DNA of 64,000 nucleotides, taken from positions 124,001 through 188,000 of IMG/VR virus record IMGVR_UViG_3300032334_002567. One strand, written 5' to 3'. The notes under the pieces are model-generated. The model did no database searches. It was not told where the DNA came from and saw only the letters and a program-made list of their open reading frames with translations. Both the position numbers and the translations under genes were made by a program. Positions 7,095-59,602 of the stretch are shown piece after piece (the stretch's first letter is position 1; each line of letters starts with the position of its first letter).

Positions 7095-7444
7095 GGGGTC
7101 GCACTGGTATCGACGTAGTACAAGGAGATATTGGTGGCACGCCGAGGTTGATCGAAAGGCCTCGTAAAAATTCGATCACGTCTTAACTGACGAAGTTTCT
7201 TACGCAATGGCTGCCTGAGAAGGCAACCACAAACTTAGGAAGCCACGCAAGAAGCGTCCAAAAGTTTGTCGCAAAATCTTGCTGGTTTCAATTGGTCAAC
7301 TTAGTTGAAACGAGATTAATAGGTTGAAAAGATTCTTAGACTTTTGTTCGTTGTAGTCGAAAGAATCTTATGAACAACGAAACAAGCGTGTAGAGGCCAT
7401 ATTGAGTTTGCTTACGGACAGGGGTTCGACTCCCCTCGACTCCA
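7095..7444 (+). ncRNA. ssrA: tmRNA, tag peptide (A)DEVSYAMAA
   Basis: Acceptor stem GGGGTCG/CGACTCC with G3.U; T arm AGGGG-TTCGACT-CCCCT; pk1-like region then TAACT resume context; tag frame 7189-7218 ends MAA-TGA; 3' end reads CTA, so CCA is not encoded. Confidence 0.95.
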
Positions 7445-7446
7445 CT

Positions 7447-7482
7447 AAAAGGAGGACTACGAAAGTGGTCCTCCTTTTTTTT
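7447..7482 (+). terminator. rho-independent terminator after tmRNA
   Basis: AAAAGGAGGACTAC-GAAA-GTGGTCCTCCTTTT followed by a T run. Confidence 0.85.
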
Positions 7483-8316: not shown

Positions 8317-8388
8317 TGCGAGGTAGCATAACGGTAATGCAGCAAACTGTTAATTTGTAAAATGTCAGTTCGACTCTGACCTTCGCAG
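8317..8388 (+). tRNA. tRNA-Asn(GTT)
   Basis: Acceptor TGCGAGG/CTTCGCA; anticodon arm GCAAA-CTGTTAA-TTTGT; T arm GTCAG-TTCGACT-CTGAC; no encoded CCA. Confidence 0.92.
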
Positions 8389-9794: not shown

Positions 9795-9865
9795 GCGGAA
9801 ATAGTTTAATGGTAGAACTACCGTCTCCAAAGCGGTTGGTGAGGGTTCGATTCCTTCTTTCCGTG
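9795..9865 (+). tRNA. tRNA-Trp(CCA)
   Basis: Acceptor GCGGAAA/TTTCCGT; anticodon arm ACCGT-CTCCAAA-GCGGT; T arm GAGGG-TTCGATT-CCTTC. Confidence 0.92.
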
Positions 9866-9997
9866 CTTTTGGTGATTTTCCTGAGCGGTCAAAAATCACT
9901 CACTACTTTTAAAACACAGGTTAAAAGGAGAAAAAGAAAAAACAAAAAAGTTTTAATCTCTATATAATATAGGTTCTTTTACATGGAGGTTTAGATC

Positions 9998-19230: not shown

Positions 19231-19479
19231 ATGGTAAAAGTCTTCCAAAAAAACCTCTCGCCAAATGCAAGTATGGCAGAAAAAGAAATAGCCTTTAAAA
19301 AAATGTTTTCTATATTTAAAAAGGCAGTAGTAGATTCAGGAATTCTACAAGAATATAAAAAGAGGGAATTCTACGAAAGTCCGGGCGAAAAAAGAAGAAG
19401 AAAGAAAAAAGAGTCAAAAAATCAACTGCTAAAGGCTAAACTAAGAGAAAATTTTCCAGAAAGATACGGTGATGCATGA
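19231..19479 (+). CDS. rpsU: ribosomal protein bS21
   Basis: FKKAVVDSGILQEYKKREFYESPGEKRRRKK. Confidence 0.88.
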   Translation: MVKVFQKNLSPNASMAEKEIAFKKMFSIFKKAVVDSGILQEYKKREFYESPGEKRRRKKKESKNQLLKAKLRENFPERYGDA

Positions 19480-32466: not shown

Positions 32467-32832
32467 ATGCCATATATTAGCAAAGAAAACAGGCAAGAGC
32501 TGGATGAGGCAATAGAGTCTCTTCGTTGGGCAATTGTTAGACTGATTGCCCCAAAAGATCGTGACTATAAGATTTTTGACATATCTTCTCATAATCTTCT
32601 AGACTCTGCTGGTAATTTAAACTATGTGATAACAAGACTCTGCGCAGGTCTAATTTGTGAACCTAGTTATTCTAAGATAGCAATTATAACTGGTGTGCTT
32701 GAAAACGTTAAACAAGAGCTTTATAGGCGTGGTGCTTCTGAGTACGAGGATCTCAAGTCTAAGGAAAATGGCGACATACCAGAGTACGTTTATATGTCCA
32801 AACTTATAAAAAATTCCTCTAATTCAATTTAA
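32467..32832 (+). CDS. conserved phage protein (DUF6899-like)
   Basis: MPYI..R, G.LNY, G.LE..K.E.YRR...YED.K...NGD. Confidence 0.6.
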   Translation: MPYISKENRQELDEAIESLRWAIVRLIAPKDRDYKIFDISSHNLLDSAGNLNYVITRLCAGLICEPSYSKIAIITGVLENVKQELYRRGASEYEDLKSKENGDIPEYVYMSKLIKNSSNSI

Positions 32833-33267
32833 TTTCTTTATAAAGTTCATCCATGCTTCATGATCGTGGATTCTAGGACAATGGTCTCCAGAGTAGTAGC
32901 AAGCATACGCCATGCAAAAAAGTTCTTCAGGTGGTTGATCTTGTTTTTTTTCTTCTGTGGAATCTAGCACTTTTTTCCATGATTTTCTCATGTTTTCATC
33001 GATAAGATGCTCCCACACTAAGTGTGCTATTTCATGTAATGTTGTGAATTTTCTAGAATAGTTCCAAGGTGCGGCTACTACTATTTTGTCTTTATGTATA
33101 TAACCGATATGTTGTTCATCACCTTTTAAAGTATTGTTTGGCGTATAAGTAAACTTGTACTTATGCAACATCCTTTTGTGATTTTTTGGAAGATTTGCTA
33201 TAAGAACTTTTACGTTCCTCTCTTCCTCAGATTCGGTCTCTTCTAAAAATTTTTTAAAACTTTCCAT
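32824..33267 (-). CDS. HEXXH zincin-like metallopeptidase with CTS-like N-terminus
   Basis: LHEIAH and PEELFC; starts MESFKKFLEE; exact TATAAATA 4 nt upstream. Confidence 0.65.
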   Translation of the reverse strand: MESFKKFLEETESEEERNVKVLIANLPKNHKRMLHKYKFTYTPNNTLKGDEQHIGYIHKDKIVVAAPWNYSRKFTTLHEIAHLVWEHLIDENMRKSWKKVLDSTEEKKQDQPPEELFCMAYACYYSGDHCPRIHDHEAWMNFIKKLN

Positions 33268-33324
33268 TCTTTATTTATATTTGCTACAATGAAAATTTAA
33301 AATAATTTAGCTATTATAATTTGT

Positions 33325-33540
33325 TCACGGCCCTAAAGGGAGGCTTCGAAGGCCTTAATTTCGATAGCTGATTGCTTCGGCTATAAAACCTTTGCAACGA
33401 ATTAATCCTACGACAAAGGAATGGAAATCTATGGTTCCACCAGTTCATAGACGCTGTTGTGCTGCGCAAGCATAAAAAAGTGACGAAATCTCTTTAAAAA
33501 AACGGAAAGCCCAAAAGAGCAGACAATCTTTTAACCGTGA
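33325..33540 (+). ncRNA. putative structured ncRNA (unassigned)
   Basis: 444-nt intergenic gap; TATAAT at 33315; closing stem TCACGG/CCGTGA with nested stems and several hairpins; terminator downstream. Confidence 0.6.
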
Positions 33541-33627
33541 TTCAAAAAAGGATAATTTCGTAAGTTTCATGATTTATCTTGAAACTTAGTTTTTAAAAAA
33601 GCCAAGTTTGCGAATCTACTTCTTTTT

Positions 33628-33660
33628 AAAGACCCAATATCTAATATTGGGTCTTTTTTT
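33628..33660 (+). terminator. rho-independent terminator
   Basis: AAAGACCCAATAT-CTA-ATATTGGGTCTTT followed by a T run. Confidence 0.85.
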
Positions 33661-33710
33661 GTTCCTTTTCTGTGTAAATATAGATAGGCTCTCAATAAAG
33701 GACAAAATGT

Positions 33711-34586
33711 ATGAATTTCAAAGACTGGATTTTACTAGAAGACAGCAAGTCTTTAGCTAAAGCTTACGTAGATTTATTGAAAGATGTCCCGCAGGATCCA
33801 ACCCATCATCCAGAGGGCAACGCTTTAGTACACATACAATTGGTAAGAAAAGCAGTGCCCAAAGCAATTGCTACGTTAAAAGTTCTAAAAAATAGAGAGC
33901 CATTCACACATATTCTTTCCGATATAAGTTTTGATGTCACACCTTTAGAGAAACAAATTCTTTATTTGGCTGCTTGGCTTCATGACATAGGTAAATCAAC
34001 TGCTACTACAGTTGGAGGCATTAATTTTAATTATCTCCGTCAAATGGATGTTATGTACCAAATGGATAGTGGGAAAATAAAATCAATTGGGCATGATGAG
34101 CCAAGGCACTATATGCCACAAATTAATAGGTTGAAGGACTTAGCGCCTGAATCAACCAAAGACCTATACATTAAGAATAAGGATCTTATAAATTTTTTAA
34201 TTGACCACCATATGGATTTGATGAATTCTGATGGTTTTTCTAATGCATTCGTTAAAGAACATTTTGTTGATGGCAAGGTAATTAATAGTCAAAAAATTAA
34301 ATTGTTATTGATCCTAATGTGGTCTGACAAGATGGGAAGAACTGAGGAGACAATACCGAAATCAATTAGAAACAATGAAGAAAGATTGGTTGCGTCATCA
34401 AATAGGTCTGTTGAACAAAGAAAAAAAGCCGAACTCGAACAGCAGAAGGCCAAGGCAAAAGATTTCAGCTCACCAGAACAAATGATCGATATGTTAACAA
34501 GAAGAGGCTTAACGCCACAGCAAATACAAATTGCTGTTCAGAATAAATTTCCAGGTTATCAACAAATTACTAAAGGAACAGAATGA
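33711..34586 (+). CDS. HD-domain phosphohydrolase (CCA-enzyme HD-like) with CTS-like N-terminus
   Basis: QDPTHHPEG...H, AAWLHDIGK, GHD, HH and SD motifs; starts MNFKDWILLE. Confidence 0.8.
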   Translation: MNFKDWILLEDSKSLAKAYVDLLKDVPQDPTHHPEGNALVHIQLVRKAVPKAIATLKVLKNREPFTHILSDISFDVTPLEKQILYLAAWLHDIGKSTATTVGGINFNYLRQMDVMYQMDSGKIKSIGHDEPRHYMPQINRLKDLAPESTKDLYIKNKDLINFLIDHHMDLMNSDGFSNAFVKEHFVDGKVINSQKIKLLLILMWSDKMGRTEETIPKSIRNNEERLVASSNRSVEQRKKAELEQQKAKAKDFSSPEQMIDMLTRRGLTPQQIQIAVQNKFPGYQQITKGTE

Positions 34587-35287
34587 GAAAAAAGCAAAGA
34601 CACAATAGATCTAAACAAAGAACTGAGGTTAAGCAAGAGCAGCCTCTAAAAAAGCAGCCACAGACTTTCCATTTTGAATTTTTTAACCAAGCACAAAAAC
34701 TTGCTTGGAGTATGTTTGATCAATACGATGTACTTTTTTTATTGGGCCCAGCTGGGGTTGGCAAGACTCAACTGGCCTGTGCATTCAGTATAAGTGAGGT
34801 TCTTGCTAAGAAAAAAGAAAGAATAATTTTGACTAGGCCGATAGTAGAAGCAGGGGAATCTTTGGGTTATCTTCCTGGTTCTTTTGAGGAAAAAGTAAGT
34901 CCTTACATGATGCCTATGTACGACTGTATAGACAGGTGTTTGGGAAAAGATGGTCCACAAAGAGAAATTATAAATAAATCAATTGAAGTTGCACCACTGG
35001 CTTACCTCAGAGGAAGAACTTTTCACAATTCTATTTGTATATTTGATGAGGCGCAAAATGCAACTTTATCACAAATTAAACTCTTTATAACCAGATTTGG
35101 CAAGAACAGTAAGGTAATTATTACTGGGGATCCCAACCAAAGTGATATTCCTGAGAGGCAACAAGGATTAATGCATGTGGTCAAAAAGCTAGAGACTTTA
35201 AATGGAGTTGGAGTCGTTTACTTTAAATCTAGTTCAATAGTTAGACATCCTTTAATAGCTTCTATTTTGGAAAAGCTAGAAGGGTAA
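34583..35287 (+). CDS. phoH: PhoH-family ATPase
   Basis: GPAGVGKT, LGYLPG, LAYLRGRTF, DEAQN, GDPNQSD, VRHPL. Confidence 0.95.
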   Translation: MRKKQRHNRSKQRTEVKQEQPLKKQPQTFHFEFFNQAQKLAWSMFDQYDVLFLLGPAGVGKTQLACAFSISEVLAKKKERIILTRPIVEAGESLGYLPGSFEEKVSPYMMPMYDCIDRCLGKDGPQREIINKSIEVAPLAYLRGRTFHNSICIFDEAQNATLSQIKLFITRFGKNSKVIITGDPNQSDIPERQQGLMHVVKKLETLNGVGVVYFKSSSIVRHPLIASILEKLEG

Positions 35288-46784: not shown

Positions 46785-46794
46785 AATTTTTGTA

Positions 46795-46924
46795 GGAAGT
46801 ATTAAGAAGGTGCCGAAAGGCACTGGCAACCGAGCAAAAGCCACGGTGCCACCAGCTATCTTTGCTGGGATACGCACAGGAGTGTTTCCTGTGAAAAAGC
46901 GGATTATCCGCCTTCTTGATCTCC
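46795..46924 (+). ncRNA. putative structured ncRNA or 5' leader (unassigned)
   Basis: ATTAAGAAGG/CCTTCTTGAT closing stem enclosing five GC-rich hairpins. Confidence 0.65.
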
Positions 46925-47291: not shown

Positions 47292-47600
47292 ATGTTTGAA
47301 CTAGAAAATTTAAAAAAACAGTTGTGCGAAAATTGTTGGTTTGATGCCTGGCTAGTTTTATGTTTTCGTCAAAACGCTAGAACACAAGAAGAACAAATTG
47401 AGATAGCAAAAGAAATGTTGTCCCCGAGTACAAAGTATTGGCTACCCAGAACTATTGCAGGGTTTATGATTTGGAGTATGAAAGCTTATGAAGCAAAAGC
47501 TACTGACTGGTTAAGGTGTCATTTAAGTGAAACAGATTTATCGGCAGAAGAATATCAAAAGCTTAACGAAAATTACAAAAAAAACACTGTTACTTTGTAA
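47292..47600 (+). CDS. hypothetical protein
   Basis: 102-aa ORF. Confidence 0.5.
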   Translation: MFELENLKKQLCENCWFDAWLVLCFRQNARTQEEQIEIAKEMLSPSTKYWLPRTIAGFMIWSMKAYEAKATDWLRCHLSETDLSAEEYQKLNENYKKNTVTL

Positions 47601-58788: not shown

Positions 58789-58980
58789 ATGTTAGTTTTA
58801 AGCAGGAAAAAGGATGAAAGTGTTGTTATTGGCGACAATGTCAGAATTTTTATCGTAGACATTAGGGGTGACACCGTTAGATTAGGCATAGAAGCTCCAG
58901 ATCGCATACCAGTGCATAGGAGCGAAGTTTATGAAGCAATAAAGGAAGCTGAAAGAAAAAAGAGCTATGAAAGAACCTGA
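58789..58980 (+). CDS. csrA: carbon storage regulator CsrA/RsmA
   Basis: [15 protein letters not shown]...VRLGIEAP...VHRSEVY. Confidence 0.95.
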
Positions 58981-59602
58981 TTTATTGGTTCAAATAGAAA
59001 ACTTATTTTCTTCAATCAATAAATCTTTTTTCTCAGGAAGAATCCAAAAGGTTCCTCTTTGTATTCTTCCACAAGAAAATTTTTTATTTTCTTGGAAAGA
59101 TAATCATTTAAGGCTAGGTTCTGGTGCAAGGTACACTACTAAAGAAGATTTTTTTATTAGTATGTGCCATGAAATGATTCATATTTTTAACCATCAACAA
59201 AGAATCGTTGATGTTGGAAGAAATTTTTATCATAAAAACGCTTTTGCTGACTGTGCTTTGAGTATCGGCTTCATTGTTGTTAAACACAAGGCACAAGGAT
59301 GGTCTGTTCTCAGCACAGAAGTTCCTAGGAACGCCTTACTCCCGCAGTTTATCAGAATTCCATTCACAGAAAATAATTCTAAAATTCTTTGTGAATTAAA
59401 TGCTTTTCAATGGGAAAAAATAGACAGAGGCACCTTAGTCTCAAATTCAAAAAATAAAAAAGCATTTTTTCTAAAATACGAATGTGATTGCCCAAGTCCC
59501 TACAACTCGGTTAGATGTGGAAGGGGCATTAAAAGTTCTAATCCTCTCCGTGCTAAATGCTTGGTCTGTGGGAGCATTTTTAAAATTTGCGATAGCAATT
59601 AG
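58967..59602 (+). CDS. SprT-like metalloprotease with zinc ribbon
   Basis: N..FF.G, HEMIH, YH...F, YECDC ... CLVCG. Confidence 0.7.

What the first reader, a model, noticed from the sequence alone, without database searches (positions are those of the whole stretch)
33315..33660. Unassigned ~215-nt multi-branched ncRNA with five ANGGA motifs
Seen: an intergenic gap without a long ORF, with TATAAT (33315) and a terminator (33628-33660). Pairings by eye are TCACGG/CCGTGA (33325/33535), TAAAGGGA/TCTCTTTA, side hairpin AGGCT/GGCCT, and ATTTCG/CGAAAT closing a junction of four arms (ATAGCTGA/TCGGCTAT, CCTTTG/CAAAGG, TCTATG/CATAGA, TTGTGCT/AGCATAA). ANGGA occurs at 33337, 33416, 33421, 33502 and 33548. 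Known: CsrA binds ANGGA and is titrated by CsrB/RsmZ-type sRNAs; csrA is in this window. Inference: a novel phage ncRNA, possibly a CsrA sponge, although some GGAs fall within predicted stems.
Basis: partly seen in the sequence, partly recalled or inferred. Interest (0 to 1): 0.75.

Follow-up and report, generated by a model that had tools for sequence, protein, structure and literature searches.

The report
Orphan structured RNA in huge phage
A 381-kb freshwater phage carries a strongly conserved, well-folding RNA cassette of about 340 bases that matches no known RNA family, is missing from related phages, and does not look like a classical CsrA sponge.

Summary
The gap 33268-33710 has no conserved ORF.

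The element is longer than 215 nt. A second folded domain (33545-33627) leads into the terminator, giving about 335-340 nt (fold z = -4.1; minus-strand core z = -0.4).

Against a 92%-identical relative, the gap differs at 5% of positions, while third codon positions of the flanking genes differ at 24%. Substitutions in four haplotypes mostly fall in loops or keep pairs (P = 0.014). Single-base indels rule out coding.

No Rfam family matches. No homolog was found in any collection searched. Eight syntenic relatives have only 43-127 nt at this site, so this is a lineage-specific inserted cassette.

The sponge idea is weak. GGA itself is not enriched, although all five GGAs are ANGGA (P = 0.004). 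Three or four of the five sit in helices, and none sits in a hairpin loop. Related phages that carry csrA lack the RNA.

Best reading: a new, self-contained structured phage sRNA gene, probably protein-binding. A cis-acting leader of the HD-PhoH genes is the main rival. No transcript data were available.

The parts
33315..33320 (+). TATAAT, -10-like box; presumed promoter of the RNA (start near 33327, inferred)
   Evidence: Read. Identical in L021 and L153. There is no good -35. The upstream TGcTACAAT (33282-90) is changed to TGCAAT in L021. No transcript data were available.
33325..33540 (+). Domain 1: helix P1 (33325-30/33535-40) closes a multiloop holding two small hairpins (33331-40, 33341-55), the junction domain and a 3' hairpin (33513-18/33527-32)
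   Evidence: Minimum-energy and centroid folds. P1 pair probability is 0.92-1.0. The indels at 33334, 33351 and 33523/4 fall in loops or a bulge.
33358..33489 (+). Five-way junction: closing helix 33358-63/33484-89 with four arms (33364-84, 33389-419, 33428-51, 33452-82)
   Evidence: The 33356-33491 stretch containing it, folded alone, gives -34.3 kcal/mol, z = -3.3. Pair-preserving changes occur at 33371, 33390, 33414, 33434, 33451, 33453 and 33459. Disruptive changes occur only at helix ends (33359, 33377).
33422..33439 (+). Possible H-type pseudoknot: UGGAA 33422-26 with loop UUCCA 33435-39, across the stem 33428-33/33446-51
   Evidence: Complementarity read from the sequence. The duplex energy is -3.7 kcal/mol. 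UUCCA is invariant while both neighbouring positions (33434, 33440) vary. Inferred, not shown.
33545..33627 (+). Domain 2: A/U-rich closing helix 33545-54/33617-27 around a three-way junction (hairpins 33557-69/33580-86 region and 33589-602)
   Evidence: Full-length fold. This stretch is 97% identical to L021. Variable sites 33576 and 33579 are in a loop. At 33621, G-U becomes G-C in X5 and X6.
33628..33660 (+). Intrinsic terminator: 13-bp stem, 3-nt loop, run of seven T
   Evidence: The C>T change at 33634 in L021 keeps the pair as G-U.
33711..34586 (+). Downstream gene on the same strand: HD-superfamily phosphohydrolase, followed by PhoH (34583-35287)
   Evidence: 22 of 35 family members hit Pfam HD. 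H..HD..H..H..D columns are invariant. The model has pLDDT 90 with weak fold matches to an HD-GYP domain, a tRNA-processing enzyme (3wfo-3wfs) and cyclic-nucleotide phosphodiesterases. PhoH scores 8e-67. A sixth ANGGA (33696-33700) lies just upstream of the start codon.
32824..33267 (-). Divergent upstream gene: 147-aa protein with an HEIAH motif
   Evidence: No Pfam or PHROG hit. Its orthologue flanks the gap in all syntenic relatives.
58789..58980 (+). Phage csrA (63 aa), 25 kb from the RNA. A second csrA lies just beyond the window end.
   Evidence: Pfam CsrA scores 87 and 61 bits. The sequences keep MLVLSRK and VHRSEV / VLRSEL.

Best explanation
The gap holds a self-contained RNA gene that was inserted as a unit (like a phage 'moron') between two divergently transcribed genes in one sub-lineage of freshwater huge phages. 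It has a -10-like box (33315) and a transcript of about 335-340 nt. The transcript has a 216-nt multi-branched domain closed by P1, an 83-nt three-way-junction domain, and a strong intrinsic terminator. The RNA most likely accumulates as a discrete, stable, highly structured small RNA that works through its shape and a few invariant exposed stretches: the A-rich 33496-33513 with ACGGAAAG, the 19-nt loop 33395-33413, and UUCCA 33435-39. That would make it a binding partner or decoy for a protein rather than an antisense regulator. Some read-through of the terminator may also feed the HD-PhoH genes downstream. What is shown: the sequence features, the significance of the fold, the strand, the strong selective constraint, the absence from syntenic relatives, and the lack of any known family. 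What is inferred: transcription, the ends of the RNA, action in trans, and protein binding.
For: Fold: z = -4.1 for 33322-33665, -3.3 for the junction, and -0.36 for the minus-strand core. Constraint: 21 differences in 443 nt against L021, compared with 24% at third codon positions of the flanking genes (binomial P about 6e-29). Structure-aware variation across four haplotypes (window, L021/L153, X5, X6): 13 of 25 variable sites are unpaired, 9 paired changes keep the pair, and 3 break terminal pairs. 20 of 23 substitutions are structure-neutral against 15.8 +/- 1.7 by permutation (P = 0.014). Not coding: single-base indels occur at five places, and two minus-strand ORFs carry stops in L021. 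Unit insertion: eight syntenic relatives (DUF6899, then the minus-strand 143-aa gene, then HD, then PhoH) have gaps of only 43-127 nt, and one has a 93-aa ORF there instead. Orphan status: no Rfam hit; no match in the phage record collection; pattern scans of IMG/VR, JGI metagenomes and GTDB genomes gave nothing; the covariance model hit only the window copy and L021. No antisense target stood out among 706 phage start regions, and there is no paralogue in the genome.
Against: No RNA-seq run could be listed, so neither transcription nor the RNA ends are shown. The -10 box has no -35, and a start 7 nt downstream would remove the first two pairs of P1. There are only four close haplotypes and no fully compensatory pair, so covariation is weak, and the structure tested was derived from one of the sequences. 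Low divergence could partly reflect recent exchange of the cassette between strains. The same-strand position 50 nt upstream of a gene, with no recognisable promoter after the terminator, fits a cis-acting leader equally well. No protein partner has been identified.
Confidence: 0.5

Rival explanations
1. It is a cis-acting 5' leader of the HD-PhoH operon. The folded domains sense a ligand or bind a protein (possibly CsrA, given ANGGA at the ribosome-binding region) and set how often transcription stops at the terminator 50 nt upstream of the HD start.
For: The order is the classic one: promoter-like box, structured domain, terminator, then a gene on the same strand. No sigma-70-like site lies on the + strand between the terminator and the start codon. 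A/U-rich segments 33491-500 and 33589-99 can each pair with 33623-33, which spans the base of the terminator, so they are possible antiterminators. 33477-89 can pair with 33555-67 as an alternative to the junction-closing helix. A sixth ANGGA lies at 33696, 9 nt upstream of the start codon.
Against: Eight orthologous loci express HD-PhoH without any such leader. Riboswitch classes are normally widespread, but this RNA was found in one lineage only. The alternative pairings are low-complexity A/U runs that would undo only 5-6 of the 13 terminator pairs. At about 300 nt and two domains, it is larger than almost all known aptamer-plus-platform units. No Rfam riboswitch, T-box or leader matched.
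Confidence: 0.25
2. It is a CsrA antagonist or partner. The phage's own or the host's CsrA dimers bind the ANGGA motifs and are titrated, as with CsrB/RsmZ.
For: All five GGAs have A two bases upstream (5 against 1.2 expected, P = 0.004). The gap ranks 7th of about 198 gap strands for ANGGA density and has the highest count. The phage has two csrA genes with intact RNA-binding motifs and no FliW. 33504 is single-stranded, 33423 may be, and both are invariant.
Against: GGA itself is not enriched (P = 0.27). The density is three to four times lower than my recollection of CsrB/RsmY/RsmZ (general knowledge, not measured here). No motif sits in a hairpin loop. Those at 33339, 33418 and 33550 are in helices with high pair probability or with pair-preserving variation. 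No Csr/Rsm Rfam family matched. Related huge phages G001 and G002 carry csrA but not the RNA. The closest CsrA relatives are from Planctomycetota, where no sRNA antagonists are known to me (the last point is general knowledge).
Confidence: 0.1
3. It has no function of its own: a decaying remnant of an inserted element, or a spacer that happens to fold.
For: It has no homologs, no transcript evidence and a single lineage. The region is an insertion hot spot (L025 carries an unrelated ORF there).
Against: Its divergence is about one fifth of that at third codon positions in both flanking genes. The fold is significant on one strand only. Changes avoid or preserve helices (P = 0.014). The terminator is perfect and a TATAAT is conserved.
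Confidence: 0.07
4. A small protein is encoded on the minus strand (33567-33695, 42 aa, TTG start).
For: This frame stays open in L021. Three of its five variable sites are third codon positions.
Against: It has a TTG start and overlaps the terminator hairpin. Two of the five changes alter the residue, and three of five at third positions is not significant. It would explain only 129 of the 443 conserved bases. The other minus-strand ORFs carry stops in L021.
Confidence: 0.03

Closest known systems
CsrB / CsrC / RsmX-Y-Z sponge sRNAs
   Same: It is a non-coding RNA with repeated ANGGA motifs and a terminator, in a genome that encodes CsrA.
   Different: There are five motifs in about 240-340 nt rather than one per roughly 15-20 nt (general knowledge). 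The motifs are not displayed in hairpin loops and are mostly base-paired. The architecture is multi-branched rather than a string of short stem-loops. No Rfam match was found. csrA-bearing relatives lack the RNA.
Large orphan structured RNAs of phages and prophages (GOLLD, ROOL)
   Same: It is phage-borne, multi-branched, strongly conserved and of unknown function, in a genome that also carries tRNAs and a tmRNA.
   Different: It matches neither model. At about 340 nt it is well below their roughly 600-800 nt (general knowledge). It was found in a single lineage rather than many.
Transcription-attenuating riboswitches with multi-way junctions (e.g. the lysine riboswitch, a five-way junction)
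   Same: A five-way junction domain is followed by an intrinsic terminator upstream of a gene on the same strand.
   Different: There is no sequence or structure match to any riboswitch family. There is no convincing antiterminator. Orthologous genes in relatives have no leader.
Phage morons (independently transcribed inserts with their own promoter and terminator)
   Same: A compact unit of -10 box, gene and terminator is inserted between two conserved genes and is absent from relatives.
   Different: In my understanding morons usually encode proteins (general knowledge); here the product would be a structured RNA.

Membership tests
CsrB/Rsm-type CsrA sponge | Many GGA motifs at high density (about one per 15-20 nt) | tested here: not met
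   Five GGA in 239 nt (and in the full 341 nt). The GGA count is not above shuffles (P = 0.27), although ANGGA is (P = 0.004).
CsrB/Rsm-type CsrA sponge | GGA displayed in loops of short hairpins or in single-stranded linkers | tested here: not met
   None is in a hairpin loop. 33339, 33418 and 33550 are in helices. 33423 is a linker or a pseudoknot strand. Only 33504 is clearly free.
CsrB/Rsm-type CsrA sponge | Match to a Csr/Rsm covariance model | tested here: not met
   No such hit at E<=10 over 33200-33750.
CsrB/Rsm-type CsrA sponge | Specific high-affinity binding of CsrA | not testable with these tools
   This needs a gel shift. Structure prediction with RNA gives no verdict, so it was not run.
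CsrB/Rsm-type CsrA sponge | Co-occurrence with csrA | tested here: inconclusive
   csrA is present twice in this phage. It is also present in related records G001 and G002, which lack the RNA.
Riboswitch / attenuator leader | Mutually exclusive terminator and antiterminator pairings | tested here: inconclusive
   Only A/U-rich alternatives exist (33491-500 or 33589-99 with 33623-33), and they cover 5-6 of the 13 terminator pairs.
Riboswitch / attenuator leader | Aptamer conserved upstream of related genes across lineages | tested here: not met
   It is absent upstream of the HD gene in eight syntenic relatives and in 13 IMG/VR loci.
Any Rfam 15 family | Score at or near the gathering threshold | tested here: not met
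   Nothing overlaps 33322-33523. The weak hits (at most 31 bits) lie downstream, most of them on the terminator; only snoR29 (33475-33531) and SpF11 (33268-33359), both under 20 bits with E above 5, touch the domain-1 core.
Structured functional RNA (generic) | Purifying selection, a strand-specific significant fold, and variation that respects the helices | tested here: met
   Covariation is limited to wobble-type changes because only four close haplotypes exist.

The most novel reading that the evidence does not exclude
The RNA is a CsrA-binding regulator of a new architecture, encoded by a huge phage whose CsrA is closest to those of Planctomycetota. It would have a few exposed ANGGA sites on a large folded scaffold that titrate or deliver the phage's two CsrA proteins, and possibly couple this to read-through into HD-PhoH. 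That would put an RNA antagonist or partner of CsrA in a virus and outside the bacterial groups where I know such RNAs to have been described.
Probability: 0.1. Interest if true: 0.8.

Novelty: new variant of a known kind. Interest (0 to 1): 0.45.

Why it matters
Huge phages carry many translation-related and RNA-related genes. This one has a tmRNA, tRNAs, bS21, two CsrA genes and a SAM riboswitch. A 340-nt RNA held under selection as strong as that on protein-changing sites, yet without any relatives, is a concrete candidate for a new phage RNA function such as a protein decoy, a regulator or a leader. It also shows that RNA genes can be gained as compact inserts like protein 'morons'. Its reach is limited for now: it is known from one uncultivated lineage, has no transcript data and has no assigned partner.

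Tried and rejected
**Searches for relatives**
- Rfam at gathering and at E<=10: only weak hits (at most 31 bits) downstream of the core, most on the terminator.
- blastn against 50,697 phage records: no match.
- Upstream regions of 13 IMG/VR HD homologs: no similarity and no gap.
- A relative of the 147-aa gene in IMG/VR: none.
- Pattern scans. ACGGAAAGCCCAAAAGAG gave 1 hit and CACGGCCCT-N3-5-GGGAGGC gave 26 hits in IMG/VR, all chance by blastn. Two patterns in JGI metagenomes and one in GTDB genomes gave 0 hits.
- nhmmer on the whole 381-kb genome: no paralogue.
- Covariance model R1 on the phage's own genome, 5 related huge-phage records, 24 loci, 5 genomes carrying the closest CsrA, and 151 Planctomycetota genomes: only the window copy and L021, plus chance-level hits.

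**Other readings tested**
- Pseudogene of the ORFs that occupy this site in other phages: tblastn negative.
- Possible partners in the phage genome: Ro/TROVE, FliW and reverse transcriptase are all absent.
- FliW next to the closest bacterial csrA genes: no Pfam hit in six neighbouring ORFs.
- RNA-seq runs: none was listed.
- Antisense targets among 706 phage start regions: no better than shuffled segments.
- Terminal repeats or target-site duplication around the cassette: none convincing.
- Promoter motif counts (TAnnTTTG, TATAAT, TATAAATA): uninformative.
- HD protein against PDB sequences and PHROGs: no hit.
- Complex prediction of CsrA with the RNA: not run, because the tool gives no verdict for RNA and shuffled controls would only report loss of GGA.

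Full report
**Setting.** The window is bases 124001-188000 of a 381,443-base IMG/VR virus record with about 36% G+C. DNA runs holding the region are lake-water, sediment and unspecified metagenomes. The window also carries a tmRNA, tRNA-Asn, tRNA-Trp and a SAM-I/IV riboswitch, a bS21 homolog and csrA. The finding lies in a 443-base gap (33268-33710). On one side is a minus-strand 147-aa gene with an HEIAH motif (32824-33267). On the other is a plus-strand 291-aa gene (33711-34586), followed by phoH. The 291-aa protein belongs to the HD phosphohydrolase superfamily. 22 of 35 family members hit Pfam HD, and the metal-binding H, HD, H, H and D columns are invariant. A confident model (pLDDT 90) resembles an HD-GYP domain, a tRNA-processing enzyme (3wfo-3wfs) and cyclic-nucleotide phosphodiesterases only weakly.

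**The observation.** The minimum-energy fold of 33322-33545 reproduces P1, the side hairpin, the junction-closing helix and all four arms. The one exception is TAAAGGGA/TCTCTTTA. It is complementary but 2.2 kcal/mol less favourable, with pair probability about 0.1. An extra A present in two variants would bulge that helix, but sits in the loop of the competing small hairpin CCC-UAAA-GGG.

The fold is better than chance on the plus strand only:
- Core (224 nt): z = -2.3.
- Five-way junction alone: z = -3.3.
- Full 344 nt to the terminator: z = -4.1, with 0 of 100 shuffles as stable.
- Minus-strand core: z = -0.36.

The full-length fold adds a second domain. An A/U-rich helix (33545-54/33617-27) closes a three-way junction that abuts the terminator. 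The unit is therefore about 335-340 nt, not about 215 nt.

**Selection.** One relative with a 92%-identical HD protein (L021, and the identical L153) carries the region. Across the gap it differs at 21 of 443 positions (5%). The flanking genes are 88.5-90% identical, with 24% divergence at third codon positions and 4-5% at first and second positions. The gap is therefore as constrained as protein-changing sites (binomial P about 6e-29). Domain 2 is the most conserved part, at 97%.

Logan contigs from two other runs supply two more haplotypes: X5 covers 33318-33624 and X6 covers 33391-33677. Across the four haplotypes there are 25 variable sites.
- 13 are unpaired in the predicted structure. 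These include all single-base indels (33334, 33496, 33523/4, 33543/4).
- 9 are pair-preserving changes (33371, 33390, 33414, 33434, 33451, 33453, 33459, 33621, 33634).
- 3 break terminal pairs (33351, 33359, 33377).

20 of 23 substitutions are structure-neutral, against 15.8 +/- 1.7 when the same substitutions are placed at random (P = 0.014). Caveats apply. The structure was derived from one of these sequences, all preserved pairs change through wobble intermediates, and there is no full double compensation.

Coding is excluded for the core by the scattered single-base indels and by stop codons in L021 in two minus-strand ORFs. One 42-codon TTG frame (33567-33695, minus strand) stays open, but there is no real evidence for it.

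**Origin.** Eight loci from relatives whose HD protein is 53-58% identical keep the same gene order: glycosyltransferase, DUF6899, the minus-strand 143-aa gene, HD, PhoH. Seven of them have only 43-127 bases where the window has 443. The eighth (L025) has an unrelated 93-aa ORF at the site instead. More distant IMG/VR relatives have no gap either. The roughly 370-base unit of TATAAT, RNA and terminator is therefore an insertion specific to one sub-lineage, at a site that accepts inserts.

**Identity.** No Rfam 15 family matches at E<=10. The weak hits (at most 31 bits) lie downstream of the core, and most fall on the terminator. No similar DNA was found in any of these searches:
- 50,697 phage records.
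- IMG/VR pattern scans.
- JGI metagenome scans.
- A GTDB genome scan.
- nhmmer on the rest of the phage genome.
- A covariance model of domain 1 on the phage's own genome, five related huge-phage records, 24 fetched loci, five genomes holding the closest CsrA, and 151 Planctomycetota genomes.

The search tools may hide records very close to the window, and the model was built from two near-identical sequences, so distant homologs could have been missed.

**The CsrA idea.**
In favour:
- The phage has two csrA genes with the usual RNA-binding motifs and no FliW.
- All five GGAs are ANGGA (5 against 1.2 expected, P = 0.004; only 0.8% of genome windows reach five).
- A sixth ANGGA lies 9 bases upstream of the HD start codon.

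Against:
- GGA itself is not enriched (P = 0.27).
- The density is three to four times lower than my recollection of known sponges.
- No motif is presented in a hairpin loop.
- 33339 and 33418 lie in helices with pair probability 0.7-0.96.
- 33550 lies in the closing helix of domain 2, whose 33551-33621 pair changes from G-U to G-C in two variants.
- 33423 can pair with the invariant loop pentamer UUCCA as a textbook H-type pseudoknot, which would leave only 33504 clearly free.
- Related huge phages G001 and G002 encode CsrA but lack the RNA, so the RNA is not a general partner of the phage CsrA.
- The phage CsrA is 65-77% identical to CsrA of Planctomycetota. RNA antagonists are not known to me in that phylum (general knowledge).

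I put the sponge or partner reading at about 0.1.

**Mechanism.** Two readings remain.

The first is a stand-alone structured sRNA gene, which I favour at about 0.5. The unit arrived complete with a -10 box and a terminator. Orthologous HD-PhoH genes need no leader. Lineage-restricted distribution is typical of sRNAs and not of riboswitches. No antisense target stands out among 706 phage start regions. The invariance of exposed stretches (33496-33513, the 33395-33413 loop, UUCCA) points to recognition by a protein or to tertiary contacts.

The second is a cis-acting leader or attenuator of HD-PhoH, at about 0.25. The order and spacing are classic. No sigma-70-like site follows the terminator. 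A/U-rich segments could compete with the base of the terminator. However, those alternative pairings are low-complexity and partial.

Neither reading can be settled without transcript ends, and no RNA run could be listed.

**Verdict.** This is a real, constrained, plus-strand structured RNA element of about 340 nt with no known family. It is a new orphan RNA of a familiar general kind, a phage-borne structured regulatory RNA acquired as an insert. Interest is moderate: the constraint and the complexity are striking, but the element is known from one uncultivated lineage and has no assigned function.

Noticed in passing
window 7095-7447, 8317-8388, 9795-9866: The phage encodes a tmRNA (Rfam 133.7 bits), tRNA-Asn and tRNA-Trp. 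ARAGORN reported the two tRNAs but not the tmRNA.
   Followed up: no
window 46794-46909 (+): A SAM-I/IV riboswitch aptamer scores 52.2 bits (gathering 41.1) in a phage genome. The first plus-strand ORF of at least 80 aa downstream starts only at 47292, so the regulated gene is unclear.
   Followed up: partly
window 19231-19479 (+): A ribosomal protein bS21 homolog (Pfam 46 bits). bS21-encoding huge phages of freshwater lakes have been described and assigned to Bacteroidetes hosts (PMC9723584).
   Followed up: partly
window 58789-58980 (+); G000:C1:189925-190086 (-), just beyond the window end: There are two phage csrA genes. The first is 65-77% identical to CsrA of Planctomycetota MAGs, which hints at a planctomycete host or donor and conflicts with the Bacteroidetes host expected for bS21 phages. 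Related huge-phage records G001 and G002 also carry csrA.
   Followed up: partly
L025:2652-2933 (-): In one syntenic relative the same intergenic site holds an unrelated 93-aa ORF instead of the RNA, so the site is an insertion hot spot.
   Followed up: no
window 33261-33272 and 33416-33427: The RNA segment AAGGAAUGGAAA is a same-sense near-copy (11 of 12) of the start region of the divergent 147-aa gene (AAAGAAUGGAAA on the minus strand). It may be chance, or mimicry of that translation start.
   Followed up: no
window 32824-33267 (-) and 58967-59602 (+): Two unannotated proteins carry HExxH motifs (HEIAH and HEMIH). The second lies directly after csrA. Neither has a Pfam hit.
   Followed up: no
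window 33711-33735; L011:2169-2612 (-); L015:2182-2625 (-): The HD protein starts MNFKDWIL, and otherwise unrelated 147-aa proteins next to the HD gene in distant relatives start MLNFKDWLI. This is a shared N-terminal motif of unknown meaning.
   Followed up: no
window 33268-33282 (minus strand); L022:1860-1875; L023:2980-3000: ATAAATA-like motifs sit 4-15 bases upstream of start codons of both divergent genes in several relatives. TATAAATA is 2.4-fold over-represented in non-coding DNA of this genome. This may be a phage promoter type.
   Followed up: partly
window 33195-33643: In run X2 (same study as the source sample), contigs identical to the window stop at 33194 and resume at 33644, leaving the cassette uncovered. 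This may be low depth or strain heterogeneity, and the tool warns that a hole proves nothing.
   Followed up: no
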